64,000 bases of DNA from Stylophora pistillata (GCF_002571385.2 NW_019218057.1:354995-418994); one strand, 5' to 3'. Shown: positions 26,897 through 64,000, counted from the first letter of the stretch. Program-made: numbers and translations. Notes: generated by a model from the sequence alone, not told the origin.

Positions 26897-28006
26897 TTAA
26901 AGTTCATCACGAACCATAGCCAGCGTGAGTTTATCAGTGATGTCAACAAAACCACCAATGCATTCACTCATTTTCATCTTCAGCTTTTGGCCTTTCTTAG
27001 CGTCAGCCATGTGAAGTACACAAATGGTAAGGTCTTTGTAGACTCGGAAATAAAGCGATTTTGATTTCAAGTCTTTGACGACAGACCACACTGTATAATC
27101 AGAGGACGTTCCTCGGGGTATATCGACTGTATTCAAGATGTGGAAAGCCTTGATAACTGCTTCTTTACCTGTCTTGACTGGATCAGAAAAATGCGCCATA
27201 ATAGCCGCGCGTACAAATCTCGATGGCGGTGTGAAGTCACCGGGTATTCCCAGAAGTCCACTTCCTTGACCAGTAGGTTTGAACGTCACTTTGCCCAACT
27301 CCAGGGCATCATGGGCCGATTTGGAAAGTTCAACATAATTGCGAATGTTTATTAGATGGAAATCATATGGCGGGGAATTGGTTACGACGCCAAGAGTGTT
27401 GTTGAACACCATTCTCCCCTGTTCAGTAAACTCAATAACGATAGCATCTCCGGAAGCGTCCACGATCGAGTAGTGTAGTTGAAAGATTCCCTTTAACCAC
27501 TCTGGGACATTGGCTTCCCATACGAGAGGGAAAGAATCCTTCTCCAAAGCATCCCTTAATTCCTGGACTGTCCCAAAGTTTCCAAGAATCCACAACGGAA
27601 ACTGCAAAGAAGACACCGCCATGTGGCATTTTTCAACTGGAATTTTCTGGAATTGGGCGAAGCCAACGAAGAGGTTTGCAGCAAGAGAAAGACCAACTTC
27701 ATTTAAACCATCGGTAGCTATGGGCATGTCTAAATCATTCAAAACGTCTAAAACGTCGACGTATGCGATGATATATTTATTCTGCCAATGCAAAGACGAA
27801 TGAAGGAAGCATTCTTTGCTAGGAACCGATGTATGAGAATACTCCCTGGGTTCTACAACGAGGTAATAACCCAAAGCACCGATGAACTCCATACTCCGAC
27901 CGACGACCACTGAGTCATCTTCGGAAGACAAGCTGAATTCAGTGCATGCGTTTGAAACGAAAAACTTGCACTGTATCACGAAGACCATGAAAAGAACCTT
28001 CATCAT
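26897..28006 (-). CDS. Ntn hydrolase, choloylglycine hydrolase/penicillin V acylase family (bacterial type), 369 aa, signal peptide and C-terminal RDEL
   Basis: MMKVLFMVFVIQCKFFVSNA|CTEF (Cys1 at 27946); motifs GRSMEF, DGLNEVGLS, HYSIVDASG, VTNSPPYDFH, GIPGDFTPPSRFVRA, AFHILNTVDIP; no introns in the CDS. Confidence 0.92.
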   Translation of the reverse strand: MMKVLFMVFVIQCKFFVSNACTEFSLSSEDDSVVVGRSMEFIGALGYYLVVEPREYSHTSVPSKECFLHSSLHWQNKYIIAYVDVLDVLNDLDMPIATDGLNEVGLSLAANLFVGFAQFQKIPVEKCHMAVSSLQFPLWILGNFGTVQELRDALEKDSFPLVWEANVPEWLKGIFQLHYSIVDASGDAIVIEFTEQGRMVFNNTLGVVTNSPPYDFHLINIRNYVELSKSAHDALELGKVTFKPTGQGSGLLGIPGDFTPPSRFVRAAIMAHFSDPVKTGKEAVIKAFHILNTVDIPRGTSSDYTVWSVVKDLKSKSLYFRVYKDLTICVLHMADAKKGQKLKMKMSECIGGFVDITDKLTLAMVRDEL

Positions 28007-28023
28007 CAAGAGGAGATCTAAAC

Positions 28024-28269
28024 CTACAATTAAACAAAATTTAATATCAAGTTTACATAAATATTTATAGCATGTAGCATGTAGCATGTTTTTGTTGCCG
28101 TTTGAAGATCGAACGAATTAAGAAGATTAAGTTGATACGTACCTCGTTTCCTTCCTTTCGAAGACTGTTTAAAAAGAAATTTAAGTATTCTGCGGGTAAA
28201 ATGATGTGAAGTAACTAGAAACTTTTTCATAAACAGGAACTTATAAGGCTGATTTATTGGATGACGTCA
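28024..28269 (-). promoter_or_regulatory. Putative Pol II promoter (CRE, CCAAT, TATAA) and 5'-UTR intron of the Ntn hydrolase
   Basis: TGACGTCA 28262-28269; CCAAT 28256-28260; TATAA 28241-28245; donor GAG|GTACGT at 28142 and acceptor TTGTAG| at 28024. Confidence 0.5.
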
Positions 28270-34201: not shown

Positions 34202-34500
34202 TATTAGTATAATTTCAGAGCTGAGCAAAGAGTTTCCAGCAATCTGATTGGTCGAGCGGTTCCTTATATGACGCTATATAAACCGCTCCACGCGGCTTAT
34301 ATAAAATGTTAAAATAAAATGTTAATAAATGTTACTAAAATGTTATGATTTTAGAAATTTCTCTGTTGCTCAGTTCTGAAATTATACTAAAACAATTATT
34401 CGCCTCAGGTTCGGTGATTATTGTCGAATATTCCCCTCGACTTTGTCTCGGGGATTATTCGACAATATTCACCTCGCCTTCGGCGAATAATTGTTAATTA
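34202..34500. mobile_element. Non-autonomous Helentron/HINE-like element, copy 2
   Basis: Near-identical to 3046-3335; complete terminal hairpin AACAATTATTCGCC...GGCGAATAATTGTT. Confidence 0.72.
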
Positions 34501-34717
34501 GTGTTAAATCCATTGCAGGTCTCAAGGCTGATAATATGGGTATATCCGCAGGTTGTAGTTATAAAGGTAATCCATCGAACTTAAAGCTAGCTTAAGATTA
34601 TGTCTACCAGACTTTTAGAGCCAACTTCGTATTAGACTTCAGAGATCTTTACGACACTTAGAAAATGAGTTTGGGACCAGACGAGCTAAGGAGACGGCCA
34701 CTGTCATTTCACCATTT

Positions 34718-35037
34718 TCAGTTGTTGCTAACCGTGATCTCAACAGACTTCATATTCGTCTTTTCAAATACCCTTAGCACACATTGGTAGACTCCGCTGT
34801 CCTCCATTTGAGCGTTTGTTATCCTTAGGACAGCTTGCACCCGGTTGGTGGACTTGTCTTTCACTATACTGACCATTCTATCCTGGACTGACGCACCACC
34901 ATTACTGATATCTCCTTTCTTCCATTGCAGCTGAGTCACTGACACGCCTTCTGATTCACACGTGACATTTGTGCTTCCGCCTGTCGACACTTTGATTGGA
35001 TTGGCTGGTTCCAATTCAAAATAGTCAGGGAGTCGAG
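34718..35037 (-). CDS. Terminal exon, Ig domain type B
   Basis: NVTCES..LQWKK..DSGVYQC; ends at TGA with no donor at the position homologous to the other B exons. Confidence 0.85.
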
Positions 35038-35706
35038 CTGCAAATTAAACAAAGAGATTACTACACCTCAGCCTTTTAGAACTACCTCAACAACTTGAAT
35101 CTTATGAACATTGGTATGCGGTCCACATTTACTCGGGCGACTATAGAGGCCTGTTACTTCCAGAGCTTATTCAGATTTCTGCAGATGAAGTACCTCTAGT
35201 CCATTGCAGGGGACTACCTTGCACTGACGTATAATCCTAAATCTATCGAAATCCTGTATCTGAAAGAACCATCGTTTTGCTAATCCAAATTTCATTTGTA
35301 AATTTGTACCGCTAGATAACAACAAGTGCAACGATTCTAGAAATTCTCTTTACCTTGGCTGACGATTAAATAACCTCGTCCAGATGGCCAGCGAATAATC
35401 TCATTTTCCTCAGTTTTGGCCTCACAAGCATACAATCCCTGGTCCTTTTGACTTAAATTCAGAAGTGTAAACACTTGACCCTTTAACATAAGCTTCTTTG
35501 CGTCGATTTTTCTCTCCCTAAAAGGTGCCAGGGGATGGCGTCTGTAATAAAGAGATGCTGTAGCATTTCTGTCGTTAGTGGAACAGTTTATCATCAACCT
35601 CCGGCCCTGGTATCCGTGCAAAATCACATTTGGTTTGACGAGGAAAGTTAATGGTTCTGCAAAAAAGTTGACAACTAAACAAAAGTAGAATGAATAAAGG
35701 GTGAAC

Positions 35707-35740
<34 letters not shown>

Positions 35741-38700
35741 GGTAACAAGGTAATTGGTTATACAATGAATATATGAAGTTCATATATTTTGAACTGCGGT
35801 TCATCGTATTTGATTTATCATCACGGGTTTATTACGAAACAACTTAATGGCCTGCTCCCAGTCGGCTTGTTAGCTCAATTGGTAGAGCGCTGCACTAGTA
35901 TCGCAGAGGTCAGTGGTTCGAATCCCGTACAGGCCTGATTTTTTTCGGGTCTGATTTTCGCTATTGCATAAATTGCGCTATCTACTGCGAAGGATCGTGC
36001 ATCATACGTGTAATTGGCTACATCAACTAAGTTGAAACTGTAAATTTGCCACCGTAACGAGTTAAAAAGCTGACGTTTCGAGCGTTAGTCCTTCTTCGCT
36101 CTGACGAAGGGCTAACGCTCGAAACGAAAACAAAAGTAGGTTTGCTGGTGGTCTACAACTGAAAAGCCTTTTGGACATAAGAAGTCTCGTAAGCTTTTCT
36201 TTCCTTGGGAACTTGAGGCCATGAGAAAAGATTCTTCATCGGCCTTCGAAATAATGAATGCAACATAGGAGGCGTATTTTGTAAAAAAAAATTATAGTTC
36301 AATTGAAAAAAAATCTGCAATGATGATAAAATGAACAAGGGAACCCTCGTAGGCCGTAGGATTTATTTAAAATACCTCTAACATGTAATGACGTCATCTT
36401 GTGGTCTGTCTTGTCAAACACCCTCAACACACATTTGTAAACACCAGCATCTTCTGGCTGAACATTTGAGATCTTAAGGATGGCTCTAACTTGATTTGTG
36501 GACCTGTCCTTATCAACAGTAACAAGGTTACTTGGGACAGAAACATCCTCTTTGTTGGTTTGTTTTACCCACTGTAGTTTGGTTTCTGACACACCCTCTG
36601 ATTCACAAGTAATAGTTACTTGTTGTCCTTGTCGTACAGTAACAGCTGTTTTAGGCCTTAAAACGAAGTGATTTGGTAATCCACCTGCAACAAAATAAGG
36701 GAAAAATACAAGATTCATATTTGACAGGAAAGTGCCCAGACTGTGCGTGTTTGTGCCGCTGGAGCTCAAAGTCACAGGTCTCCCACTGGAATATTTCATA
36801 ACCATGTGCTATTTACTATGACCAATTCTGAGTAACGAGTCAACAACATATTATCCGTTATGACCGCTTCTATATAAAATGGCCTTTTTTTTATTCAATT
36901 TCTCATAATTTTTCAAGTCACGGGAAAGTTGATGTTTTGTTTGGAGACAAATCAATTGGCTAAAATCCTGTGAATTACCTTACCTCGAATAGGAATCAAA
37001 TATCCTCTGCCATGTGGCCATCGAATGTTCCAACCACCCCGATTACTCGCCTGGCAGGAATATATTCCAGCATCTCTGCGTTCAACATTTAGAAGAGTAA
37101 AAACTTTTCCTTTCCTCAATAGTTTATTTTCTCTAAGATTCAGCTCATGGAAGGAAGCAAGCGGATGCTGTTTGTATAGAAGAGACACTGTTGCTTCCCG
37201 ATCATTTGTCGAACAGTTAATGACTACATTCTGGCTCAGATATCCTCGTATGATTACTGGTGACTGGTCGAGAAATTCTAACGGTTCTGTTGGGAAAACC
37301 AAGAATACGCACATGCACAACTTTGACGAATTACAGAAATTTTAGAGTCTCAATGAGATAGGGTGAGTAATATCATTGGCAGTCCAGACTTAAGGTGTAG
37401 CTATCTTGGGTTCTAATGCAATTATAGAACCCTTTTGTTGCCTTTTAAGGCTGCTCAGATATGAATTTTTATCTGATACACGTGTTTATTGTTTATCAGC
37501 AATCTTACAATAAGAATAGTTTCAGTTCTGGGCCCTTTGTTCCTTCTGCCCATCCTACTCTGAGAATGTTAGCTCATGAGACACCTAAACTTGCACAGAG
37601 ACTTAAACTGGTCCAAGTCTGTCTTCATCTAACATGTCCGCTAAGATGCACGTGCACATGTCTGCATCGCCAAACAAGCATTCCATCACGTGGGCTTACT
37701 TCTCACACTCCTTATTCAATCTACTCGTTTCTTTAATCTCGTAAACTATTGTAATCAGGTTTCCTTTAGTATCAAGAAAGGGAATTGAATTCACTTCACC
37801 TTCATTAATAATCAAATATCCTGTTCCCGGAGGCCACCGAATCTTGTCATTTGCTTCGTTTTTAGCCTCGCAGATGTAGAATCCAGCATCTCTTAAACCG
37901 ACGTTGAGAAGTTCGAACGCCTGTCCTTTCTTTAAAAGTTTTTTTTCTTCTGGCTTCAGTTCGGCAAAGGCCACAAAGGGATGGCGCCTGTAAAAAAGGG
38001 ACACTGTAGCATCTTGGTCATTGGTGGAACAATTTATCAGTATTTCTTTGCCCAGGTATCCTTTTAAAATATTCTGTGGTTTTTTAACAAAGGCCAAGGG
38101 TTCTGCCGAGAAAAACAAGTGCAGTAGATGAGGAAATGTCAAAATAATTCTTATGAAATTTGAATAACTTCCGAAAAATTAAGAATAATAAAATAGTACA
38201 AATTTCTTACCACTTCGAACAAGTTTGATGATATGAAAATCACTTCCCAGTTTATTAGACGCCAGACATCTGAAGCTCGCAGTTGGTTGATTACTTTGAA
38301 CTTTGACCACACTCTTTTTTATCGGTAAGTTTGGAGGAGACATAAGTAGACTTTCAGGTACGGGCATCCATTGACTTTCAACTGGCTCACAAGCGCTTGT
38401 GTTCAAAGTGAAACAATCCATGTTTTGATATTCCCACTTGAATGTTGGCAGAGGATTCCCTTTGTTCACCACACAAGACACTTTCGACCCCTTGCCGTTA
38501 CCACTGAGCACCTTGTATGGTTTTTGTATTAATCTGGGCGGAGCTATAAAGGATAATTAACACGTGGTGTTTTAGTTTTACAGAATATAAAAATTAATGA
38601 TTTGGGTAAAGGGGTAAAGAAAGGCGACTTTGCTGGAGAATTGCATTTGCAGTAACATTGCCAAACCAGAAAAAGTGAGCAATGAACAAGACAAGGCCCC

Positions 38701-41700
38701 AGAAATCTGCTTCTTTTCATAAACAAACATGATTTTTGTTTACTTTCCGGACCGTTGGGCCACCGACGTGAGTGTCAGGTAACCAAATTTTGAGTGCAAA
38801 TACAAAAGTTAACATCGCTTTAAGTTTAATCATACCTAAGACGTTTAGATTGATGATTAATTTTGCAGGTTGGGCGTGACCGTTTGTTGCAACACATTCA
38901 AATTTTCCTTGATCTCTTGAGTATACTGCACTTCGTATTTTAAGAACTTTTATAGTCCTAGTATTCTTTCCCCGAAACTTGCGTTCTTTAGGCTCTTCGT
39001 AAACTTCATACGCAATTCCCTGGCATCTGACATCACTTAAATTGGAACACTTCATCGTAGGCAGCTTCTTGCCGTTTCTGTACCAGTCTACGTCAGGTTT
39101 GTGGATTGCTGTTGCTATGCATTTGATGACCTTTATCGAGCCTTCTCTTACGGTTTTTTCTCTGACAATGGTTGGCAGTTCGTCTGTTGAAATGTTAGAA
39201 CAACCATTTATTGCAATTTTCTGCTAATAATCATTACACGATCTTTGTTTCCACACGAATCATTTTCATTAATCCAAAACAGAAAAAAGAAAACAGAATT
39301 GTACACAGAGAAATGTTTCGACAACCCCTTTTTAAAAATTATACCTCGAAATAGCTTTTCACTGATCACTATGTTCAGTTTAGCTGTTTAAATGAGGCTT
39401 GATTGAAGTGGAATATGGGTCTTTAAAAATGAATTTGTAACTTCCTCTTTCCGATAACTTTTTTTTTTTTTAATTTTCTACGGCTGTTTGCTGCGGTTGG
39501 TAACCTTAGTGAAAAGGATAATCAGAGAAATTAAGATTTCAAACCTCGATGCTGGACATCTGGTGCTGTTGTGATAAGCAGAGGAGTTGTAAAGTCTGAG
39601 GTGACGTCTGGGAAACTAGTGATTTCTCTAGTTGGGTTGTAAGGAGGTTCTGTGGCGTCCGATGTTGTTATGACTTCTCGTACTGCTGTGGCGTATTGAT
39701 TTGCCACAGTGACAGTCTTCGTAGTTGTAGCCTCTACTGTTGGTGCAGCATCTTTCGCAGCTGAAAAATATGGATGTTTTGTGGAATCTGTGGGCGCTGA
39801 AGCTCTTGTGGAATCCACCATTGCCGTGGAAGCTGGGGTTTCAGAGATACCTTGGATTACTGTCATGAGTACAGCAACTGTACTATCTGAAGCTGGGGTA
39901 GAATCTGATGTTGCTGTTATAACTTCGGCTGTTGAAATATCTGAGATTGACTCGGTAACTGGCACCGTTGTAGTCTCTGAAGCTAATGTTATATCTGTAT
40001 TCGTTGAGGTCTCTAAGGGTGTTGTCATGTGTGGCTCTGCCGTGGTGTACGATGGTGATGCGGTATTCTGGGCTATCTTAGTATCTGAGACAGATGTTGT
40101 GGCGTGTGGAATCGCTGAAGTATCTGAAACCATTGTAATTTTCCGTGTCTCTTTAGTTTCCACGGTTGTTGTGATAGCTGAAGTTGTTGTGGTATCTGAG
40201 AATTCTGCGCTACTGCGAGGGAAAGTTGTTGGAACGATACCTGCTACTTCTGATGAATCAGCAGTAGTGTCTGGAATGGAAGAGATGCTCACTACAGCAT
40301 CGGTATTTGAGATTGGCGCTGTATTTGAAACAGTAGTGGAAGCGGTTGACCCTGGGACTGCTGTAACTGGGGTTATTGCTGATGTGGTGACTGAGGTTTC
40401 TATGGTATAGGGGTTAAAGTTATCAGAGCTTGTTGAAGTGTCTGAAGAAGAAACAGCATTCGTGACTGAAGCGTTATCTGAGGTTGACGCCAACTTAGAA
40501 GTTAATTTTGAATCTTGGGTTGACGTGCTACTTATGGAAACTTTGCTCTCTGCAGTAGAAATGGTAAAAGGGGTAGCTGTGGTGTCCGTGGCAGCTGCTG
40601 ATGTGATATCAGGGGCAGCTTTGGCAGTGGCAGAACCCGAAGCATCAGTTGTACCTGTGACTGTAGTAGGATCTAGGGTCGTTAGTGTATCAGGATCTTT
40701 AGCGTTGTTACCTAAGGTTGGAGAAGCAGCTAAGTTGGGTCTGGTATCTGCGGTGACTGCTGATGTGGCATCAGAAGTTTCTGTGGCAGGTAAAGTAGCA
40801 CTAGTGTAAGGAGCTGTTTTATCACCTGAAGCAGTGGTACTTTCTCCGACTGAAGAATGATGAAATGTTGATGTCGAATCATCCGGAGACGCTGTGGTAG
40901 CTCTGATCGACGAGGTAGGTTGGGAACTTTCGGAGTCAAGGGCTGTTGTGGTATCTTCAGTGGTAATGCTATCAAGGGCTGTTGTCCTATCGGAAGCAGC
41001 AGTAGTCTTCAGGATTGAAACAGTTTTTAAAGTTTGTTTTGTGGCTGAAGTCACTGTTGTATGAAAAGTTGCTGAGGTAACTGGGGTGGCTGCGGTATTT
41101 AGGGTACCCTCGGTATCTAAAGTGGTAGTTGTTTTAGGGACCAGCGTAGGATGTGATTTCGATGAAAGATCTGATGTTGATGTGGTGACTGGGCCAAAAG
41201 TGGTACTTTCAGCTCCAGCGGCAAACGAGCCAGGTGTGCTATCTGGAGTCTCTGCATTAGGGGCAGTTGTGGTATGTATTGATGGAAGAGGTTGGCCTAT
41301 GTGACAATGATTTAAAAGTTACATAAGTAATTTATTAAGGATAATTAATTGATAAACAGAAGTGGTCAATTATAACCTTGAGTTTGAGATAAAAGATTAA
41401 CATGTTATTACATACCTTCCATGTAAACGTTAAGTTCTGCAGTGGCCTGTATTTTTCCCAAGTAGTTTTCTGCAAAGCACTGATAAGGTCCCATGTCGGA
41501 CAGCACAAGCATCTTGACCAGCAAGTATCCGTCTCCAATATCGTTGAAATAAGATTCCTCAATCACGTCTCCATTTCGACTCCATGTGATAACCGGTTTG
41601 GGTATTCCGTCAGCAAAGCATTCAAACAGTGCATTGGAATCGGAGTAAGCATGGACATTATTTGGTTTCTTGATGAATACAGGGGGATCTGTGGAATAAA

Positions 41701-44700
41701 ACAAAAACCTTGATCATATACCATGTTTACTCGTCTAAGCCTGCCGTCGGTTATCAGAGCCTCTTTCGATTTTTTCAGTCGGTGAACAGGCGCAGAATAC
41801 AATTGTAGAGCAAGAAAGGAAAGGACGTTTTGGATGAGTCACGCAAACCTCTACCATTTTTTTTGTGCCACGTTCACCCACTGAACACGTGGAATAAGCT
41901 TTGTTTATTTAATATTTAAAACTCGGATAAGGCAGTTTTTTCGGGTGGCGGTTGCCCAAAAATCACCAATCTGAAAAATGATTTATTTCCCCTTTATGTG
42001 GAGATGCATGTTAATAACCTGTTCGAACTGATATAACTTACGATGTACTTCTAGCTTGATTGAAGCTTCTTTAATGCCGTTTCGTGAAATTGCGCGACAG
42101 GTGTATGTTCCTGCCTGTTCCTCAGTTACTGATTCAATCATAAGGTTGTTCTCCCCAACAACAGAATAACCACTCCCGAGCACCACAGGCAACCCATCTA
42201 ATAGCCATGTGACTCTTGGCTTAGGAAATCCGTTTGCAATGCATTCGAGTATGAAAATATCTCCAGCGATGACTCTTCTCTCGTCAGATGTGACGGAAAC
42301 AGTTGGACCTCGAGGAAACTCGCTATCTATGCACCGGAAGAAGGGAAAATATAGCATAATAACGCACTCAACCAGGATACGACAACAAAAGAAATCGAAT
42401 TTCAGCCATGTAACTAACTGACGTATTGACTTACTATGATTCCTCGTAAAACACCCGTGCAATACAAGGCATTGGTGTGTTATCTAACGAATGACCAACC
42501 TAACAATCAATATAAAGGCTGTTACTCTTTCTCAGCAGCAGGGGACTTCTTCCATGTTTCTAGAACCTCATCTGAAAACTTGTGTGGTTTGAAATTAGTT
42601 TGTCGACAGTCCTCTCAACCTCCCTGAGTGTTTGATGACTGGTACAGAGCCTGATGTGACATTAAATGTCTCTTTCCCCAAACATAAGGACAGCCTTATT
42701 TTGGGGTTATTTGAAAAGTACGATAGAAACACCTCCTCCTTATAGGACCAGTTTACGAATGGGATGATAAACTACTGATACGCTGAGTAGAAAAGGACTT
42801 TCCATTTAATTTTGCGGGCCAACTTTTGGCGCACTAGCATAAGAAATGGTCAACGATGACATGCTACCCATATATATCCTAAATATATCTTATATGTCCT
42901 ACCCGTTATGACTTTAAGTGACGCTGTGATTGTACTCGTGTAACTCGTTTTAGTCACAGTATTTTCTGCCGTACATTCATAGTCTCCTTGGTCATTAAAA
43001 CTGCTCTCGGCGATCTGTAAGGCTCCATCGGAAGTTGTTGTAAAACGTCCTCTAGACTCAATGAAGTTATTTTCTCCAAGCTTTCTCCATCTAACAACGG
43101 CTTTCGGTGTTGAATCGTTTACGTTGCAATAAAACCTTGATGTGTCTCCAAATGAAACTTGTAATTTGGATGGAGTAACAGCCACCTTGGATGAAATTTC
43201 TGTTGATCAAAAGCACATGCCATTTGATATTCTTACAGTCACTTTTGTCTTTGTTTCTTTCTTTAGTTCTTTTATGTGTTGATTCAAGACATTCAAGATG
43301 AATAGCTGCTCGGTCATTTTATCAACCGGAGGCAAATTCACCCCACGGCACGACTTCACTTCTTATCTTTGAAGTGTTCTCCAATGACGTTTTTCATAGA
43401 CGCACTAGGAGCGAAGATACTGTACCGCATTCGAAATGCAGCACTCCACAAACTTCCCGATTCGCCTTCAGGTTTCTGTAAGTTTGACTCACTACGAATG
43501 CTAGATTACCTATTAAACATCATTTGCTACCCGTTTTTTCGGTATAAATAAAACCTCAAGCAATGTCATGGCAATTTTTTCTGACGGAGACGAGTTTCCT
43601 TTTCAATTTAGTAACAGAGGCTTGATGTGACTTACCAGCAACAACGAGACGAGCAGTTCTGCTCAAAATCTGGAAATCTAGATCCATGTCATTACGTGTT
43701 AACGCCTCGCACTGGTAGATTCCTTCATCTGAATTTTCAGTAGTGTTATGATTAACTTTCGAAAAATACAAAGACCCGTCCGGCCTTATCATTCTCCGGT
43801 CATCTTGCGATAAATCGAGTACAATACCATTTCTCCTCCATGCTATAGCGGCCTTAAGGTTTCCGCCTACCAAACAGTCCAGGACAGCGGATTTACCCCG
43901 CTGCGCATACGTGTCTCTCGGCTCCTTGATGAAATACGGTGCTCCTGTTGACCCCAATACTTCTAAATACATAGAATGATTAAAAAGACATGAAAATAAG
44001 ATAGAATGAATAAATAAATGAGTACATAAGTGAACATGAACACACGTATTAGTGTAACTGTGTTTATTTCAAGCCTTGGTCCTATTCCTTCTTTCTACTC
44101 ATACGTCCACTAAGATAACGCCACAATGTGAACTTAGCTTAACATTATAAAATTTTCTCGGCTGATTTTCTCCGCTGCAGTATTGATTACTAAAAAACAT
44201 ATTCAGTATACCTCTGAACTAATAATGAAATTTTCCTTTGTTCTGCAACGAGATAAAGTCTTAAACAGAAGACTGAATCCAATATAAGTTTGACTGAAAC
44301 CTTGATTCGTTCAGCTGGATGAAAGGTAAATGTCGAAGAAAAAAAGAAGCGAATTGTTTAGAGGACTGCTTCATGAAGCAAGCCAAAAAGTAAATATATT
44401 GCATTACCAATACTAACGGCCAGAATTTGTGATGCAATTACTTCTGAAAATAAATCAATTAAAGAATCAACTATGAATAAAAAAGAGTCGAGACCCTTCA
44501 CTTTAACATTTACAGTCGAAATAGTTCATTGCACAAGACCTACATAATCGTTTGCTTTTACGTTAAATATTGAATTTTAATTGCCTCGAATTGCTTGGCT
44601 GTAATATGCTTTACATTTGCTCACCCGACGACACCGGAAATTGCAAGCTATTCGTACCCTGCAGTGGAATAAGGATAGTTCGCCAAACTCGTCAAATTTT

Positions 44701-45624
44701 TTTCGGATATGTTACATCTCACCCCACGGGCAAGACAACTGCACTGTTTTCCCAGGTGAACAATTTAATCTAAGACAACGTTATCTCAGGACCATTGATA
44801 GCCATAACAAGAGTTTATGACCTGAGATTCGGCGAGACTGGCACAATTATCAACCGATCAGCTGTAAATGCAAACGACTACTTTGCTGTTTCTCTCCAGT
44901 CTCTGCTCGGATATGAATTGATATTAAAGCTTAGCTGCTTTACATCTTGCAATTACGAAGATAAGACGCTTGGCGCCTTGGAAAGACGTTGAACATTTCC
45001 GAATACCATCGCTTTAGAACAATCACGGAGCCAAAATACGTATTTTTTTGTTCCATTTCTTTTCAGGGACTGCTGGATTGTTAAGAGAGAGTCCTGGTTA
45101 TTTCAACTTTAAAACTACACTACAGTTTCTCCTCTGATATCTAAAAAAAGCCTGTCGTGTTAACATCTGAAAAACATATTTTTTCAGTGTGACCCTAAAT
45201 TATACTAGCCGATAATGTTTTTGATAAACAAACCTACCTCTTAAAGCTGCCTAATTAGATTATAATCTTTGTCGAGCTACATAAAAAAATTAGAAAGAAA
45301 CCTTCATGACCCTTCTCGATGCAACCCAACACAATCTGTGAATAGCTTGTTTACAGGGGTGTGCCTTCGAAAACATTTGCCTGTTGAGAGCAAACAACGT
45401 TGCCCTACATGGATCGCAAAACATAAGAAATTACACCTCAGGTGGATTTCTCATGCTGCTAGGTCGATTATTATTTTGCAAAAAGAATTTTGTATAAATA
45501 TATAGTACTGCCAATAAGACATGTCGGCTAAGATAGAGAGACATCATTTTACGGACTAACCTGGCATTACAGCGAGACCCAAAATACCAATGAGAGTACT
45601 GCGGAGAACATAAAGGTTAACCAT
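34718..45624 (-). CDS. Multi-exon secreted Ig-superfamily protein (~1750 aa): signal peptide, 4 DCC/neogenin-like Ig, Ser/Thr mucin region, 7 VEGFR/PDGFR-like Ig, no TM seen
   Basis: Exons, all joined in phase 1 with GT-AG: 45624-45561 (MVNLYVLRSTLIGILGLAVMP), 44443-44408 (possible microexon), 43962-43636, 43199-42903, 42326-42042, 41688-41416, 41296-39545, 39183-38836, 38543-38211, 38102-37800, 37286-36984, 36684-36376, 35656-35354, 35037-34718 (stop); total 5253 nt, in frame. Confidence 0.8.
35354..35656 (-). CDS. Exon, Ig domain type A (303 bp)
   Basis: INCSTNDRNATASL..DQGLYAC; AG/GT boundaries. Confidence 0.88.
35707..36126. mobile_element. Penelope-like terminal fragment with an inverted hammerhead pair, interrupted by the tRNA-like element
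   Basis: Homolog of 10841-10983; + strand GCT-CTGACGA-A-GGGCTAACGCTC-GAAACG at 36098-36126. Confidence 0.65.
35761..36009. mobile_element. tRNA-Thr-like retroelement insertion with internal inversion
   Basis: tRNA-like core on the + strand; 40-bp inverted end piece at 35761-35800; TSD GTAATTGGTTA / GTAATTGGCTA. Confidence 0.85.
36376..36684 (-). CDS. Exon, Ig domain type B
   Basis: VTITCES..LQWVK..DAGVYKC. Confidence 0.88.
36984..37286 (-). CDS. Exon, Ig domain type A (303 bp)
   Basis: INCSTNDREATVSL..DAGIYSC. Confidence 0.88.
37800..38102 (-). CDS. Exon, Ig domain type A (303 bp)
   Basis: INCSTNDQDATVSL..DAGFYIC. Confidence 0.88.
38211..38543 (-). CDS. Exon, Ig domain with an extra internal Cys pair (VEGFR D5-like)
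   Basis: VSCVV..GNPLPTFKW..DC......AC..FRCLASNKLG. Confidence 0.85.
38836..39183 (-). CDS. Exon, Ig domain
   Basis: IKCIA..PDVDWYRNG..DQGKFECVATN. Confidence 0.85.
39545..41296 (-). CDS. Exon, 584-aa Ser/Thr/Ala/Asp-rich mucin-like region
   Basis: Open 1752-nt exon in frame with ORF 39531..41054; acceptor CATAG| at 41297. Confidence 0.85.
41416..41688 (-). CDS. Exon, I-set Ig domain (DCC/neogenin Ig4-like)
   Basis: PPVFIKKP..FECFADGIPKPVITWSRNG..SDMGPYQCFAEN. Confidence 0.9.
42042..42326 (-). CDS. Exon, I-set Ig domain (Ig3-like)
   Basis: LECIANGFPKPRVTWLLDG..AGTYTCRA. Confidence 0.9.
42903..43199 (-). CDS. Exon, I-set Ig domain (Ig2-like)
   Basis: GDTSRFYC..VRWRK..GALQI..DQGDYECTAEN. 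Confidence 0.9.
43636..43962 (-). CDS. Exon, I-set Ig domain (DCC/neogenin Ig1-like)
   Basis: FIKEPRD..RGKSAVLDC..WRRNG..DGSLYF..SDEGIYQCEA..SRTARL. Confidence 0.9.
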
Positions 45625-50423: not shown

Positions 50424-53400
50424 ATGGAGTGCAACTTTTTAGTTGTTTGCTTTATTTCCATGTTTACTTTTCTCTTGCCATCTCGTCCTGGTATGTACAA
50501 TATTTCTAACTTTTATAACTTTGAGCATAAAATTGCAGTATCGTGAAGAAAATTGTAATATCATGTAAACTTACTCCAAAGATTGTTACTCTAACGAACG
50601 TCACGTATAGATATTAAAGGGAAATCATCCAATCTCTCTACCTGTGGTTTCAGGGAAATCTTGAGGTCCATACGAAATGAAAGCAAAAATTCACAATCAC
50701 GTACATTTTAGGAGGCAAACCACGCCTCATGCTGGTTTATAAATTGACGAATCATGCTCGCTTTTCCGTAAAATTCCCGGGTCACATTAATTTCTGACAT
50801 AATCACACGTCGAGCATAAACCCATTGACACCGGTTACGAAATAAGTCGTAGTCATCAAGTCACCTAGAGCAATTGATATTAGTATGTTGTAGAAAACTT
50901 ATTTTCACTTTTAACTTGGGAAGATGAAGAAAGTGTGTTGTATGACCCATCTACGTAACATCTTCTGGCGGCTTGTTGGCGTCATCAACAAGAAACTGTA
51001 GAGGTCAATCCATAACTTTAAGCACAGTAAGATTAATCAAGTGATCATTTAATAATAGCACACTGAGTTAATCTCAGAATTAAAGCACGCGAAAACTCAC
51101 CGTACCGGCAGGTTAACTTTAAACCAAAGTGGAACATTTTCATTCAAGTAAAAATCTATTGGGCAGTGAAAAATAACTTCAATTGCGTTAATGTTTTGTG
51201 GTCTGGATTTCAACATTTTGCCCCGGACGAAATATAATAAGCTTAATATCAGCTTACGTCTACGTCGCCGAGACTTCTCACAGGAAACATCATTTTTAAG
51301 TTACTGCTCTTCTCTTCTTCAAACACAAGACTTTTAAGGTGGCTGGTACTAGTTTTCATCTTTTTGATGGCTTGTCACTTTGAAGAATACAACAAAAAGA
51401 CTGACCGAAGCCAATTGGACACTTCTACTGGGTTGAATTATATAATCATTGGTTATCCAAAAACAGGAGTCATTTCGTCACTAGCAGTTTCCATGGCAAC
51501 GCTTTCAAAGGATTCTTCAAACGTATTTTTTAGCTTATGGCTCAAATAATTTGAAAACTAACTCAGTGACCCCATGAATTTTCTTAGTGATTGCTTTCGT
51601 CACTTGAAAAAGAAAATGCACAAAGATTTAAAAAAATTATACGGAGCGGAATTTCAGAAAATCTAGAAAAAGGCAATTTTCACGCATCGCAAATGTCGTT
51701 CCTATAATTTTCTAGGTTTTTTTTCTGACGATTCCTTTCAACGTTATTATCATATTGGAAAAATAAAAAGAAGGGGTCACTGGACTTGTTTTCATGCAAT
51801 AGCTTTCGTGAGTTTAGCAATTCCCACGCGCATTCTGGCGCATTTTAAAATCTGGATTCTATAAGATGGACATGTGCTCATGATCTGTTATAGCTACCGC
51901 TGACTATCGCGTGTGTTCGCGCGAGCACCTACGATCTGATGTTTACAGACGTTTATTGCTAGGAAAATAATTCAATAGCCGTCAAAGACCTACTCACAAG
52001 TTCTGGCTATAATATTTCATTTCCCTTTAAGTTTCACAGTCTTCTTGCACTTCAGGCAGATTATCCTTCCCTTTTTTAGTTCTTTTTTCGCCGTCGCAAG
52101 ATTGCATATCGGTTGGATGTTTCGTTTAGATACGAAGCAACCTTTATGTCTCCGAGATTCTTCTTCTTTATCTTCGTTTCTGTCTCCTGCATACACAATG
52201 GCCGTTCAACACATCAAATACACGCTGTTAGGTAAACTTATTTCAAAAGTAGAAAATAGCTTTCCGCCGCCATCTTTGTTTTGAATTTTCGTCTTTTAAC
52301 TGATCTCGCGCTTCTTTCGCAAGTTTCTCTCACGCGTGAAGCAAGAGTGTCCTGTTCCCCGCGCGAGGAATCTAGTACAAGCCACCTTAGGATGTCATTT
52401 TATTTCCTTGACATTGTAAGAGTATTTCTTTAGAAATCACTCCCTAAATCTACCATTAGTAACCTCTGCATACATCACACAGTTTGATTAGTTTGGTATT
52501 TTTGTTGGCTTGCAAATCTATTTGTGTTGTCTACATTATTTGTAGACAAGAACTGAGCGTTTTCACCTGTCCACGCCAAAAACGGAATAAGGTTCCACTG
52601 TTGAACCCTTTATTAAACGTCATTGCTATAGTTGAGTACGCAGAATCATATTCTACTATCTAGAGTGCTATCAAAATTTTATGTTTTAACGGCTAACGTT
52701 TTTCTTTTTAATGAAAGTTGTAATGTCTGTTTGGTTAAATGTACATGTAGCATGCAGGTCAGCATGGAGCTGGCAGGGGCATTTGGGTGACTTTGAGAGT
52801 AAGATTACTCCCTTTTCTCTCACAGTGTCCTACTCAACTCAGCAGTCTAAAGGGTTCCTAATTAGCTTTTAAGGAACCTGAAAAAGTATCGGTTATCCAC
52901 ATATTGAGGTCGATTGGAAAATTCCCGACAATCGGCAATGTCACTGTTTCCCGCCTGCTTTAGATTTTACCAATATATCGGGAGATCGACATATGTCTTT
53001 CCCAGATTATTTTACACGCCATTTTATTCAATACGCTTGGGTATTGTACTTAGCAAGTGGCTAAAGGACCAGCACGCTAGAGTTACAACTACTGATTTGT
53101 ACCTTACATGTCCCAAACGGTGAAAATAGAGGTTTTTATATATCTTGAATAATCGCCCGTCATCGCAGAAATCTGGCACGTGCTAGGAAAATAGAAACAT
53201 TCCTGATTTTCCCAATTTGTCGCTGACCATCCCAGACAGTCGGGAAATCTCTAAAATTTTGAGTTTTCATTTCTCAAAAAGGCCTGGCACCGTGGGGAAA
53301 CAGTCAAATCCCTGATTGTCCCGGGATTTTCCCGTCATGTGAAAACCAGGCTTAAAGCTTCATCTTGGCAATGTTTACTTTGCTGTAGGTGTGGAGGCCT

Positions 53401-56400
53401 TAAAGTTTCTCAATCCTCCATCCCAAGTGTTAAGTGGATTCATAGGTATGAACATTGATGTCAACTGTTCAACGAATGACCCATATGCAACAGTTCAGCT
53501 TTTCCACTCAAGAGACTTTGTAACATATACTGAAAGGACTTTGTCTCCTGAGAAACTTCACCTAAACAAACAAGTTTTCACATTGTTAAACCTTGGTGTA
53601 AAGGATTCTGGACAATATAAGTGTAAAGCAACAGATGGACAACAAACCATTGAATGGCCAAGCTCTCATGGATTCCTCTTCCTTTCTCAAGGTAGGTGGA
53701 ACACAAATACATCTTATGTTATGTATTATTTTGCAATTCTAAACCTAGCCGGCAGTATATTAGAAACTTAAGTGCAGAGTTCATTAGTGTTTCATCGTAA
53801 ATCATCCTTTTCAATTTCTTTAATGGCCATACAGGAGTTTCTCTTTCCCCAGAAAACCTTTATCGAGTTTAAGGAAAAAGGTGTCAAAAGGATATAACAT
53901 TATGTATTACATGCTATTTCTGTTTGAGTTCACTCCATATTCCCAAAACCTATCTTTTAAGAAATGCTTTTAGAAAACAGTTTGGTGAGTTCAAATTAGA
54001 TCTTTGGTGTATACAGGCTAATTTTCCGGTGAGATTGCATGAAATTCATGAGGTTGCTAAGATTAAAATGCTATGTGATTTGTAAGAGTTATCAATTAAT
54101 AAAATAATTTTATCTAAATGAAGTTTACGTATGATGCACGATCCTCGCAGTAGATAGCGCTATTTATGCAATAGCGAAAATCAGAACTGAAAAAAAACAG
54201 GCCTGTACGGGACTCGAACCACTGACCTCTGCGATACTAGTGCAGCGCTCTACCAATTGAGCTAACAAGCCAACTGGGAGCAGGCCGTTAAGTTGATTCG
54301 TAATAAACCCGTGAAAGTGATAAATGAGACAATGAATATATGAAGTTCATATATTTTGAACTGCGGTATTAGATACGTATGATGCACCGTACAGGCCTGA
54401 TTTTTTTCAGGTCTGATTTTCGCTATTGCATAAATAGCGCTGTCTACTGCGAGGATCGTGCATCATACGTATCTAATACCGCAGTTCAAAATATATGAAC
54501 TTCATATATTCATTGTATCTCATAAATGAAGTTTATAGTAAACAACACATTTAACTGAAAAGGTCACTGGGGTAGACAGTTTTGACAATGTTGATGAACA
54601 TGTCATTTAAAAGTGCTGTGTTTTCTTACAGGAAAACTGCCAGATATTATATTTGATCCACCAAGACCAATCACTGTACAGCAAGGTCAAACTGGAAATG
54701 TCACATGTCAAACTGTTGGTTGGTCAGTCAGCAAACTGCTTTGGAAAAAGCGAAGTAACTCTGGTGACCAAACTGTTCCAGACAGCAAGGTTGTACATGT
54801 TATAGATAAAACTGAAAACATGGTAAAAGCAGTCCTTACCATCACTAATGCTCAAACTCAAGATAGCGGTGAATATAAATGTGTGCTGTCGGCTTTCAAC
54901 AAACAGGATTATAAGATTGCCAATATACGTGTGGATGGTAAGCTGTGAACTATTTTTATAAAGCAGCATTACGTAGCATTCTTATTAAGCCACTAACTTT
55001 GTATTCCGCGTGAAGCCATTACTATAGTTGAGTACACAGAATCATATTCTACTCTCTAGAGCGTTATCAAAGTTTTATGTTTAAATGGTTAACTTTTCTC
55101 TTTTTAATGAAGGTTGTAATGTCTACTTGGATAAATGTACATGTAGCATGCTGGTCAGCATGGTGCTGGCAGGGGCATTTGGTTGAGTTTGAGAGAAAGA
55201 TTACACCCTTTTCTATCACAGTGTCCTACTCCACTCAGCGGTCTAAAGGGCTCCTGGTTAGCTTTTAAGGAACCTGAAAAAATATTCGTTATCCACATAG
55301 TAATGTCGATTGGAAAATTCCCGACAATAGGCAATGTTACTGTTTCCCACCTGTCTCAGATTTTGCCTATATATCGGGAGAACAACAGATGTCTTTCCCA
55401 GATTATTCCACACGCTATTTTTCATTCAAAAGTCAGGGGTACGCTAATAAGCAACTAGCAGTAGGACTGGTAAGCTGGAGCCGGAGGAACAATGGGCACA
55501 GTGGACCAGTGGCACAATGAGTACAAGGACCAGTGGAACAGTGGAGAGAGAGGATCACAGGAACAGTAGGCACAGAGGACCGGTGGAACAGTGGGTAGAG
55601 AGGACCAGTGGGCACAGAGGACCAGAGGAACAGTGGGAAAATAGGACCAGAGGAACAGTGGGCACAGAAGACCAGAGGAACAGTGGGTACAGAGATTCAG
55701 ACTGTTCCTCTGGTCTACTGTACCCACTGGTCCTCTTTTCCCACTGTTCCTCTGGTCCTCTGTACCCACTGTTCCTCTGATCCTCAGTGTCCACTGTTCC
55801 TCAGTGTCCACTGTTCCTCTGGTCCTCTGTACTTACTGTTCCTTTGTTCCCACTGTTTCTCGGGTCCTCTCTGCCCACTGTTCCTCTGTGCCCACTTGTC
55901 CTCTGAACCCACTGTTCCTCTGTGGCCACTGGTCCTCTGAGCCCACCGTTCCTCTGGTCCTCTATACCCACTGTTCCACTGGTCCTCTGTACCCATTGTG
56001 CCACTGGTCCGCTGTGGCCACTGTTCCTCTGGTCCCCTGTGCCCACTGTTCACTGATCCTCTCTTCTTACTTTTCCACTGTACCACTGGTCCTCTGTATC
56101 CACTATTCCACTAGTTCTCTGTACCCACTCACTTTACCCTTCTGCTACATCTATATGTTAATTATTAGATATTTCAGAACCCAGTATATGAGAGACTACC
56201 CAATATATCTCGAATAATCGCCCTTCATCGCATAAGTCTGGGACGTGCTGGGAAAATAGAAACATTCCTGATTTTCCCAATTTGTCGCTGAACATCCCCA
56301 GACAGTTGGGGATCTGTACAATCTTGAGTTTTCATTTGCCAGAAAAGTCTGGCACTGTGGGGGAACAGTCAAATCACTGATTGTCTGGGATTTTCCCGTC

Positions 56401-63898: not shown

Positions 63899-64000
63899 GT
63901 AAGCTGTNNNNNNNNNNNNNNNNNNNNNNNAAAGCAGCATTACGTAGCATTCTTATTAACTGACCACTAAGTTTTGTAGTCCGCGTGAAGCCATTGCTAT

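What the first reader, a model, noticed from the sequence alone, without database searches (positions are those of the whole stretch)
34718..45624. Chimeric secreted protein: DCC/neogenin-like head, mucin stalk, and VEGFR-like Ig array with no TM or kinase
Seen: 13-14 phase-1 exons giving ~1750 aa, 11 Ig domains, and a stop directly after the last Ig. Known: DCC/neogenin have 4 Ig then FN3 repeats and a TM segment; VEGFR/PDGFR have Ig arrays, a TM segment and a kinase. Inference from motif resemblance by eye: exon shuffling fused two receptor ectodomains through a long O-glycosylated spacer, giving a bifunctional soluble bridge, decoy or mucus component. I do not recognise this architecture.
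Basis: partly seen in the sequence, partly recalled or inferred. Interest (0 to 1): 0.75.

Follow-up and report, generated by a model that had tools for sequence, protein, structure and literature searches.

The report
Secreted coral DCC-mucin-receptor-Ig chimera
This is a real, expressed and conserved coral gene for a large secreted protein that joins the four-domain head of a netrin-receptor (DCC/neogenin) relative, a long mucin-like stalk and seven immunoglobulin domains copied from the outer part of a receptor tyrosine kinase, with no membrane anchor or kinase; what it binds is unknown.

Summary
On the minus strand, 45624..34718, lie 13 exons, all joined in phase 1. They give 1,738 aa: signal peptide, 4 Ig, a 583-aa Ser/Thr-rich exon, 7 Ig, then a stop directly after the last Ig.

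RNA contigs from three studies each join the mucin exon to all seven tail exons and a 3'UTR, exactly at the predicted splice sites. The head-to-mucin junction was not covered by reads.

Each of the four head Ig exons is 51-61% identical to the same-numbered Ig exon of a canonical DCC/neogenin-type gene elsewhere in this genome. The tail exons are 36-49% identical to the first four Ig exons of Ig-ectodomain receptor tyrosine kinase genes of this genome, but in a permuted order.

No TM or kinase exon lies in the window or up to the contig end.

Metagenome contigs of other taxa carry the same order: Ig4, a mucin exon of 504 or 902 aa, then the tail. One of them has the same terminal stop. Tail dN/dS is 0.29.

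"VEGFR-like" is only indirectly supported. Function is inferred: a soluble two-ended bridge or decoy.

The parts
45561..45624 (-). Exon 1: ATG and 21 full codons of a hydrophobic signal-peptide-like leader; donor in phase 1
   Evidence: The maximum 19-aa Kyte-Doolittle window is 1.72, the only one of 1.6 or more in the protein. Donor is CAG|GTTAGT. No RNA evidence. No SignalP tool was available.
43636..43962 (-). Exon 2: Ig1 of the DCC/neogenin-type head
   Evidence: Ig_3 38.9 bits; top solved structure is DCC 3laf_A, query residues 7-108 on chain residues 21-119; 52.9% identical to Ig1 of the C354 DCC-type gene.
42903..43199 (-). Exon 3: Ig2 of the head
   Evidence: I-set 48.3 bits; aligns to DCC residues 112-181, but contactin-2 ranks first; 51.0% identical to C354 Ig2. 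The acceptor was read from the sequence printed.
42042..42326 (-). Exon 4: Ig3 of the head
   Evidence: Ig_3 55 bits. DCC residues 214-287 rank third; Dscam ranks first; 53.3% identical to C354 Ig3.
41416..41688 (-). Exon 5: Ig4 of the head
   Evidence: I-set 56.6 bits; top hit is DCC 5z5k_A, chain residues 292-378; 60.9% identical to C354 Ig4; 87% and 82% identical to the Ig4 exons of the orthologous loci L048 and L049.
39545..41296 (-). Exon 6: mucin-like Ser/Thr/Pro/Ala-rich stalk, 583 full codons
   Evidence: S+T 40%, no Cys; no Pfam hit. RNA contigs run from 39545 to the laid limit at 40299 and beyond, and are joined to exon 7; orthologues have 504- and 902-aa exons at the same place, with a conserved acceptor and donor.
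38836..39183 (-). Exon 7: Ig with 4 Cys, paralogue of the third Ig exon of kinase gene X on C777
   Evidence: I-set 38.3 bits; 46-47% identical to the C777 exon. RNA junctions 39545|39183 and 38836|38543.
38211..38543 (-). Exon 8: 4-Cys Ig of the VEGFR-D5 / PDGFR-D4-like kind
   Evidence: Ig_PDGFR_d4 26.6 bits against a cut-off of 27; 14 of 34 family members hit Ig_PDGFR_d4 and 4 of 34 hit Ig_VEGFR-1-like_5th; the best single-domain match of the family profile is VEGFR2 residues 401-539 (34.9 bits). RNA.
37800..38102 (-). Exon 9: 'A'-type Ig (first copy)
   Evidence: weak Ig hits; 57% identical to exon 12 and 41% to the first Ig exon of kinase X. RNA.
36984..37286 (-). Exon 10: 'A'-type Ig (second copy)
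   Evidence: ig 31.3 bits; 44% identical to kinase X exon A. RNA junction 37800|37286, so no 'B' exon lies between the two A exons.
36376..36684 (-). Exon 11: 'B'-type Ig
   Evidence: Ig_3 51.5 bits; 39-41% identical to kinase-type B exons. RNA.
35354..35656 (-). Exon 12: 'A'-type Ig (third copy)
   Evidence: weak Ig hits; 45-46% identical to kinase-type A exons. RNA.
34718..35037 (-). Exon 13: 'B'-type Ig, then the TGA stop (34718-34720) directly after the domain
   Evidence: Ig_3 43.7 bits; sequence read. RNA; orthologue L049 ends ...KIDNNQ* at the same point.
34472..34717 (-). 3'UTR, at least 246 nt, running into a high-copy repeat
   Evidence: the contigs of X1 and X2 start at 34472 and that of X5 at 34580. 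Depth rises about 1000-fold below 34500.

Best explanation
What it is. It is one conserved, expressed coral gene that encodes a secreted glycoprotein of about 1,738 aa.

Shown:
- An N-terminal leader and four Ig domains that are collinear paralogues of the DCC/neogenin Ig1-Ig4 module.
- A 583-aa mucin-like exon, whose length differs between taxa (504-902 aa).
- Seven Ig domains paralogous to the first four Ig exons of Ig-ectodomain receptor tyrosine kinases of the same genome, in the order D3-like, D4-like, D1, D1, D2, D1, D2.
- A stop directly after the last Ig.
- No FN3, TM, GPI-type tail or kinase.

Inferred origin. A duplicate of the 5' part of a DCC-type gene acquired duplicated kinase-ectodomain exons. 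The short Pro/Thr linker that follows Ig4 in the DCC-type gene is a possible source of the stalk. All exons are phase 1-1, which allows such shuffling. This happened before the sampled coral lineages split.

Inferred mechanism. The protein is secreted. The O-glycosylated stalk holds two receptor-derived binding modules far apart, on the order of 100 nm if extended. It would therefore work as a soluble two-ended bridge or decoy. The kinase-type end would bind the unknown ligand of the related kinases, or the kinases themselves. The horseshoe-type head would bind a cell-surface or matrix partner. It cannot bind netrin in the canonical way, because the netrin sites of DCC lie on FN4-FN6 and these domains are absent.

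My odds: one real conserved gene with this architecture 0.9; secreted 0.8; bridge or decoy mechanism about 0.3.
For: - Gene model and domains.
- RNA. One contig in each of X1 (4,012 nt), X2 (3,344 nt) and X5 (3,492 nt, polyA RNA-seq), from three studies, joins 3'UTR|E13|E12|E11|E10|E9|E8|E7|E6 at the predicted GT..AG sites. In the raw reads of X22 the first mates lie on + only in the exon bins, which fits a minus-strand RNA. 20 rows from 7 studies hold part of the stretch.
- Head. Each Ig exon matches best the same-numbered Ig exon of the C354 gene (52.9, 51.0, 53.3 and 60.9% identity, E 1e-31 to 1e-39). C354 has 4 Ig, FN3 repeats, a TM segment and a weak Neogenin_C start. DCC is the top solved structure for Ig1 and Ig4, and all four exons align to the same-numbered DCC domain.
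- Tail. Its paralogues sit in two kinase genes on C777, which carry TM and PK_Tyr_Ser-Thr exons.
- No TM or kinase homologue in the window plus the remaining 4 kb of the contig (best chance hits E >= 0.15).
- Conservation. L048 and L049 carry Ig4, a mucin exon, then E7, E8, A, A, B, A. L049 also carries the last B and a stop. L050-L053 carry E8 followed by A. The splice signals around the mucin exon are conserved. Tail dN/dS between L048 and L049 is 0.29 over 619 codons; for Ig4 it is 0.16.
- Netrin sites lie on DCC FN4-FN6 and Ig1-4 forms a horseshoe platform: passages read in PMC5871715.
Against: - The E5-E6 (head to mucin) junction and exons 1-5 were not seen in reads. The only read-laying run covered 34300-40299.
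- The share of words held by RNA runs (0.39-0.54) is only suggestive for the head, because a transcribed intronic repeat also contributes words.
- The tail exons give generic Ig matches to solved structures, so no ligand can be inferred.
- The tail order is permuted relative to the kinases, so it need not keep their ligand site.
- In L050 and L051 no E7-like exon lies within 2.3 and 1.9 kb upstream of E8.
- dS between this genome and L048/L049 is saturated (0.94-2.46).
- Nothing here bears on binding partners, localisation or phenotype.
Confidence: 0.6

Rival explanations
1. It is a passive structural component of surface mucus, glycocalyx or extracellular matrix. The mucin stalk is the working part. 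The Ig ends only cross-link or anchor it, or bind microbes, without any link to DCC-type or kinase signalling.
For: - The stalk has S+T 40% and no Cys.
- Orthologue L048 has 54-nt x 19 and 144-nt x 7 tandem repeats, and stalk length varies from 504 to 583 to 902 aa. This is typical of mucin domains.
- The protein is secreted by inference and has no anchor.
- The tail evolves faster than the head: dN/dS 0.25-0.43 in five of six tail exons (E7 0.10), against 0.16 for Ig4.
Against: - There are no VWD, CK, SEA or other mucin-assembly domains.
- Both ends are kept as intact receptor-type modules under purifying selection in several taxa.
- Ig4 is 82-87% identical between taxa.
Confidence: 0.25
2. 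It is a soluble member of a fast-evolving, immune-type or self/non-self recognition receptor family. This coral has many lineage-specific Ig-ectodomain kinases and kinase-less partners. This protein would be a secreted recognition or opsonin-like form of one of them.
For: - Earlier notes of this scan, which I did not check, describe many shuffled receptor kinase families in this genome, some with kinase-less or inhibitory-tail partners.
- The gene lies head-to-head with an array of kinase-type A/B Ig exons on the + strand.
- Tail exons are only 53-67% identical between taxa whose Ig4 is 82-87% identical.
Against: - dN/dS is below 0.45 in every tail exon, so there is no sign of diversifying selection at this resolution.
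- The gene is single-copy in this genome: E7 finds only itself and C777.
- No polymorphism data were examined.
Confidence: 0.1
3. The model merges two transcription units: a head (with or without the stalk) and a separate mucin-plus-tail RNA. Alternatively, a membrane-bound or kinase isoform exists through exons not seen here.
For: - The E5-E6 junction was not covered by reads.
- Reading through the exon-6 donor gives a stop after 3 more full codons. A head-plus-stalk isoform is therefore possible.
- The contig ends 4 kb beyond the window.
Against: - The Ig4 exon and the mucin exon are adjacent, on the same strand and phase-compatible, with a conserved acceptor and donor, in three taxa.
- The mucin exon has no leader of its own.
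- RNA contigs of three studies end in a 3'UTR after exon 13, and no joint leaves exon 12 or 13 for anything downstream.
- There is no TM or kinase homologue in 68 kb.
- The next downstream genes are unrelated: a CBAH hydrolase and a GPCR.
- The stop is conserved in L049.
Confidence: 0.05

Closest known systems
DCC / neogenin / UNC-40 / Frazzled netrin receptors (and the protogenin/Punc/Nope branch)
   Same: It has four N-terminal Ig domains collinear with DCC Ig1-Ig4, one Ig per phase-1 exon. These are 51-61% identical to the genome's own DCC-type gene.
   Different: It has no FN3 repeats, no TM and no P1-P3 tail. The canonical netrin sites (FN4-FN6) and the signalling tail are therefore absent. 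For the netrin sites I read passages of PMC5871715. Passages of PMC10084454 state that all DCC homologues have 4 Ig, 6 FN3, a TM and a tail.
Ig-ectodomain receptor tyrosine kinases (VEGFR/PDGFR/FGFR kind), here the two convergent genes on contig C777 of the same genome
   Same: The tail exons are paralogues of their first four Ig exons (36-49% identity). The E8 type resembles the VEGFR D5 / PDGFR D4 kind. Gene Y has seven Ig-type exons before the TM and kinase, as VEGFRs do.
   Different: It has no TM and no kinase. The domain order is permuted and partly triplicated. The class of the related kinases is unresolved: the kinase exon K1 hits FGFR4 best.
Soluble receptor decoys such as sFlt-1 (soluble VEGFR-1) and soluble PDGFR-beta
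   Same: It is a secreted protein made of receptor-kinase ectodomain Ig modules without TM or kinase. The known examples act as ligand traps. For these I saw abstracts only: PMC2663039, PMC5983705 and PMC10136073, in the listing.
   Different: Those decoys arise from the receptor gene itself, by alternative splicing, polyadenylation or shedding. This is a separate, old gene, fused to a DCC-type head and a mucin stalk. Ligand binding is untested.
Ig-mucin adhesion molecules (MAdCAM-1, TIM family); recalled from general knowledge, not from any call
   Same: Ig domains are combined with a long O-glycosylated mucin-like stalk.
   Different: Those proteins are membrane-anchored and have one to three Ig domains. 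This protein has 4 + 7 Ig domains on both sides of the stalk and no anchor.

Membership tests
DCC/neogenin family | Four N-terminal Ig domains collinear with DCC Ig1-Ig4 | tested here: met
   each exon aligns to the same-numbered DCC domain, and DCC is the top hit for 2 of 4; the best own-genome match of each exon is the same-numbered exon of C354.
DCC/neogenin family | Six (or two to five) FN3 repeats after the Ig head | tested here: not met
   no fn3 hit in any of the 12 exons scanned; the transcript goes from the mucin exon into Ig exons only.
DCC/neogenin family | Transmembrane helix and cytoplasmic P1-P3 / Neogenin_C tail | tested here: not met
   no hydrophobic window of 1.6 or more outside the leader; stop and 3'UTR directly after the last Ig.
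VEGFR/PDGFR-class receptor tyrosine kinases | Ig array with the characteristic membrane-proximal D4/D5-type domain | tested here: inconclusive
   E8 scores 26.6 bits for Ig_PDGFR_d4 against a cut-off of 27; 14 of 34 relatives hit it at E <= 0.01; the best single-domain match is VEGFR2 residues 401-539, but neuroplastin ranks first overall; the other tail exons give generic matches.
VEGFR/PDGFR-class receptor tyrosine kinases | Transmembrane segment and (split) tyrosine kinase domain | tested here: not met
   no TM or kinase homologue of the C777 genes in 68 kb; the transcripts end after exon 13.
VEGFR/PDGFR-class receptor tyrosine kinases | Ectodomain collinear with that of the related kinases | tested here: not met
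   the kinases run A,B,E7,E8,Ig5,Ig6(Ig7), which L054 and L056 confirm. This gene runs E7,E8,A,A,B,A,B.
Mucins (secreted gel-forming or membrane-tethered) | Pro/Thr/Ser-rich, often tandemly repeated, O-glycosylation domain | tested here: met
   S+T 40%, P 7%, no Cys; tandem repeats in orthologue L048. In this genome only one 35-nt repeat is left. Glycosylation itself is not testable here.
Mucins (secreted gel-forming or membrane-tethered) | VWD/CysD/CK assembly domains, or SEA plus TM | tested here: not met
   no such Pfam hit in any exon.
Soluble decoy receptors (sFlt-1 type) | Binds the ligand of the cognate signalling receptor | not testable with these tools
   The ligand of the related coral kinases is unknown.
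Soluble decoy receptors (sFlt-1 type) | Produced from the receptor gene by alternative processing | tested here: not met
   It is a separate locus. It is 36-49% identical to the kinase exons and is conserved as such in other taxa.

The most novel reading that the evidence does not exclude
Stony corals carry a dedicated, genome-encoded 'double-receptor' soluble organiser. A netrin-receptor-type horseshoe and a multi-copy receptor-kinase ligand-binding array are held apart by a length-variable mucin rod. The protein would physically couple two signalling systems, or trap their ligands in the mucus or glycocalyx layer. A ligand trap of this kind made as a separate, standing gene rather than by alternative splicing of the receptor gene, and fused to a DCC head, turned up in none of my searches.
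Probability: 0.15. Interest if true: 0.8.

Novelty: new variant of a known kind. Interest (0 to 1): 0.55.

Why it matters
- It is a clean, datable example of exon shuffling between two classic metazoan receptor families: a guidance receptor and a receptor tyrosine kinase. The product is a conserved secreted protein rather than a receptor.
- It shows a DCC-type Ig1-4 head kept under strong constraint without the FN3 domains that bind netrin. This points to a ligand or partner of the horseshoe itself in cnidarians, which could now be fished out with a natural soluble bait.
- If the tail traps the ligand of the related coral kinases, it would be a handle on orphan, lineage-specific kinase families that earlier notes of this scan report as numerous in this genome.
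- If it is only a mucus or matrix component, it is still a marker for coral mucus or matrix biology with a species-variable repeat stalk.

Tried and rejected
- Representative search with the E8 exon. It gave 113 hits at E <= 1e-3, 28 at E <= 1e-10 and none at E <= 1e-30. No full-length model of this gene appeared; the best hit is 53% identical over a 140-aa exon-sized fragment. The five long hits I scanned are generic Ig proteins. This says nothing about whether annotated coral proteomes hold the gene.
- Named relatives. Of 4 proteins looked up, only one cluster carries a name, a hypothetical protein of Oculina patagonica.
- Solved-structure searches of tail exons. The matches are generic Ig and not VEGFR-specific.
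- A-type exons against Pfam. Only 2 of 8 reach the VEGFR-1-like Ig model, with best E 1.2e-4.
- A lost 'B' exon between exons 9 and 10. None was found by tblastn, and the RNA joins 37800 to 37286 directly.
- Possible adjacency of the end of this contig with the end of C777, which would put the + strand A/B array upstream of kinase X. blastn finds only the A exon at 80-85% identity and no overlap. I dropped the idea.
- Descent of the mucin exon from the Pro/Thr linker of the DCC-type gene. It has the same position after Ig4, but the sequence is low-complexity. I keep it as a possibility only.
- Papers. Six searches found no description of this protein. Supplementary tables, such as coral skeleton, mucus or single-cell marker lists, were closed and may hold it under an automatic name.
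- The species name Stylophora pistillata comes from earlier notes of this scan. I did not verify it.
- I did not use the search for homologous proteins. Its length window (0.55-1.75x) cannot reach a 1,738-aa protein from any single exon.

Full report
The sequence. The window's minus strand between 45624 and 34718 carries a row of stop-free stretches that translate into Ig-like domains and one very long Ser/Thr-rich stretch. A scan for AG and GT sites consistent with the reading frames gives one model in which every junction is in phase 1. The exons are: E1 45624-45561 (ATG plus a hydrophobic leader), E2 43962-43636, E3 43199-42903, E4 42326-42042, E5 41688-41416, E6 41296-39545, E7 39183-38836, E8 38543-38211, E9 38102-37800, E10 37286-36984, E11 36684-36376, E12 35656-35354 and E13 35037-34718. 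The 10 internal exons listed are flanked by AG and GT and have lengths that are multiples of three. I placed the E3 acceptor by reading the sequence printed. The coding sequence is 5,217 nt, which gives 1,738 residues. TGA follows the last Ig domain directly.

Domains. All 11 putative Ig exons hit Pfam Ig families at E <= 0.01, and 8 of 11 score above a curated cut-off. The three that do not are E8, E9 and E12. E9 and E12 are 55-57% identical to E10, which passes. E8 belongs to a conserved four-cysteine Ig family. The 583-residue exon 6 has T 24.9%, S 15.3%, A 12.2%, P 7.2% and no cysteine. It has no Pfam hit and only a trace of tandem repeat. The only 19-residue hydrophobic window of 1.6 or more is the leader (1.72); the next highest is 1.34. 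The C-terminus is hydrophilic. I therefore see no TM segment or GPI-type tail. No dedicated predictor was available.

Transcripts. Twenty rows from seven studies hold part of 34700-44000. RNA-type runs hold 0.39-0.54 of its words and DNA-like runs hold 0.98. I laid four runs on 34300-40299; this was the only call allowed, and 6,000 letters was the limit.
- In each of the three contig runs, from three studies and one of them a polyA RNA-seq library, a single contig (4,012, 3,344 and 3,492 nt) covers 3'UTR-35037 | 35354-35656 | 36376-36682 | 36982-37286 | 37800-38102 | 38211-38543 | 38836-39183 | 39545-40299 and goes on. These are exactly exons 13 to 6.
- The skipped parts begin with CT and end with AC on the + strand, which is GT..AG on the minus strand.
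- Raw reads of a fourth run show three of the same joints, and their first mates lie on + only in the exon bins.
- No joint leaves exon 12 or 13 for anything downstream.
- The 3'UTR is at least 246 nt long and runs into a very high-copy repeat, where the contigs stop.
- I did not cover the head or the E5-E6 junction. The word shares are only suggestive for the head, because a transcribed repeat in the E11-E12 intron also adds words.

The head. Ig1 and Ig4 have DCC as the top solved structure, and they align to DCC Ig1 and Ig4 respectively. Ig3 has DCC third, aligned to Ig3. Ig2 has contactin-2 first, with DCC far down the list but aligned to Ig2. In the window's own genome the best non-self match of Ig1 is on contig C354 (53% identity, E 2e-30). 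That locus is a canonical DCC/neogenin-type gene. It has four Ig exons, a Pro/Thr linker, about six FN3 exons, a TM segment and a tail with a weak Neogenin_C start of 19.2 bits, below the cut-off of 25. Each head exon matches the same-numbered exon of that gene best, at 52.9, 51.0, 53.3 and 60.9% identity. So the head is a collinear paralogue of the DCC Ig1-4 module. According to passages read in PMC5871715, this module forms a horseshoe platform, while netrin-1 binds FN4-FN6. According to PMC10084454, all DCC homologues carry FN3 repeats, a TM and a tail. None of these is present here.

The tail.
- Own-genome searches with E7, E8, A and B exons lead to contig C777. Two convergent genes there carry Ig exons, a TM segment and tyrosine-kinase exons, with PK_Tyr_Ser-Thr scores of 73-95 bits.
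- Gene Y has seven Ig-type exons. Six of the seven hit Pfam Ig families at E <= 1e-3.
- Identity of the tail exons to these genes is 36-49%.
- The order differs. The kinases run A, B, E7-like, E8-like, Ig5, Ig6(Ig7), TM, kinase, which metagenome contigs L054 and L056 confirm. This gene runs E7, E8, A, A, B, A, B.
- Against solved structures the tail exons give generic Ig matches.
- Only the E8 type points to the VEGFR/PDGFR kind. It scores 26.6 bits for Ig_PDGFR_d4 against a cut-off of 27. Of 34 family members, 14 hit that model and 4 hit the VEGFR-1-like 5th-domain model. The best single-domain match of the family profile is VEGFR2 residues 401-539 (34.9 bits), although neuroplastin ranks first overall.
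- The first kinase exon of gene X hits FGFR4 best. I therefore call the relatives Ig-ectodomain receptor tyrosine kinases of the FGFR/VEGFR/PDGFR kind and leave the class open.

No anchor or kinase. A tblastn search with the TM and kinase exons of both C777 genes finds nothing better than E 0.15 in the window plus the 4 kb to the contig end. Downstream on the same strand lie an unrelated CBAH-family hydrolase and a GPCR.

Conservation.
- A scan of metagenome contigs with the E8 exon returned 9 loci.
- L048 (9.6 kb) and L049 (8.4 kb) carry, in one orientation, an Ig4 exon that is 87% and 82% identical to ours but only 58% identical to the DCC-type paralogue. Next comes a long stop-free Ser/Thr-rich exon: 902 aa with S+T 0.48 in L048, and 504 aa with S+T 0.40 in L049. 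Both begin with the same few residues as ours. Then follow E7 (67%), E8 (61% and 59%), A, A, B, A.
- In L049 a last B follows, ending in a stop directly after the domain. L048 ends before that point.
- The acceptor and donor around the mucin exon are conserved in all three.
- L048's stalk is a true tandem-repeat array, 54 nt x 19 and 144 nt x 7.
- L050-L053 show E8 followed by an A exon, which is the order of this gene and not of the kinases. In L050 and L051, however, no E7-like exon lies within 2.3 and 1.9 kb upstream.
- Between L048 and L049, counting only codons aligned to our exons, tail dN/dS is 0.29 (619 codons, dS 0.26) and Ig4 dN/dS is 0.16. Against our genome dS is saturated.
- One E8-like fragment carries a name, a hypothetical protein of the stony coral Oculina patagonica. 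Earlier notes of this scan call this genome Stylophora pistillata; I did not check that.

Reading. The gene is real, single-copy here, expressed, constrained, and older than the split of the sampled coral lineages. The phase-1 exon layout, the collinear DCC-type head and the kinase-type tail fit exon shuffling between a duplicate of the 5' part of a DCC-type gene and duplicated kinase-ectodomain exons. A related array of A/B exons still lies head-to-head on the + strand of the window. I infer that the product is secreted, and I infer the mechanism as a two-ended soluble bridge or decoy. It cannot act as a canonical netrin trap. A passive mucus or matrix role and a recognition-type role remain open.

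Limits. Six literature searches found no description of the protein, and supplements could not be read.

Noticed in passing
window 53343-64000 (+), continuing to the contig end about 4 kb beyond the window: An array of at least four 'A' and three 'B' Ig exons lies on the + strand, head-to-head with the gene studied. They are 66-78% identical in protein and 80-85% in DNA to the first two Ig exons of kinase gene X on contig C777. A LINE-type reverse-transcriptase ORF (58464-61360) and tandem repeats interrupt the array. No leader, TM or kinase exon was seen before the contig ends.
   Followed up: partly
window 35700-36300 and 34300-34500: A high-copy element lies in the E11-E12 intron and just past the 3'UTR. 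It is represented in RNA contigs and reads at depths 1,000 to 10,000 times those of the exons, with many joints and inverted joints. A related stretch occurs near 54265-54462.
   Followed up: no
window 26900-28117 (-): A single-exon 406-codon ORF scores 201 bits for the Pfam CBAH (choloylglycine hydrolase) family. It is the next gene downstream on the same strand. First-reader notes on this window already flag it.
   Followed up: no
window 3727-4824 (-): A single-exon rhodopsin-type GPCR ORF scores 158.5 bits for 7tm_1.
   Followed up: no
G000 contig C777, 82510-113477 (loci L043-L047): Two convergent Ig-ectodomain receptor tyrosine kinase genes lie here. Gene X shows local duplications of exons (two E8-like copies, two copies of the Ig5/Ig6 pair) and three copies of a unit of about 621 nt before its TM exon. 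These may be real or assembly redundancy.
   Followed up: partly
G000 contig C354, about 132000-167431 (loci L021-L025): A canonical DCC/neogenin-type gene lies here: 4 Ig, a Pro/Thr linker, about 6 FN3, a TM and a tail. Large transposon-derived ORFs sit in its introns.
   Followed up: partly
L048 1669-4374 against L049 984-2495 against window 39545-41296: The mucin exon differs nearly two-fold in length between two fairly close taxa (902 against 504 codons, at dS about 0.26). It is a clean 54-nt and 144-nt tandem array in L048, but has lost detectable repeats in this genome.
   Followed up: partly
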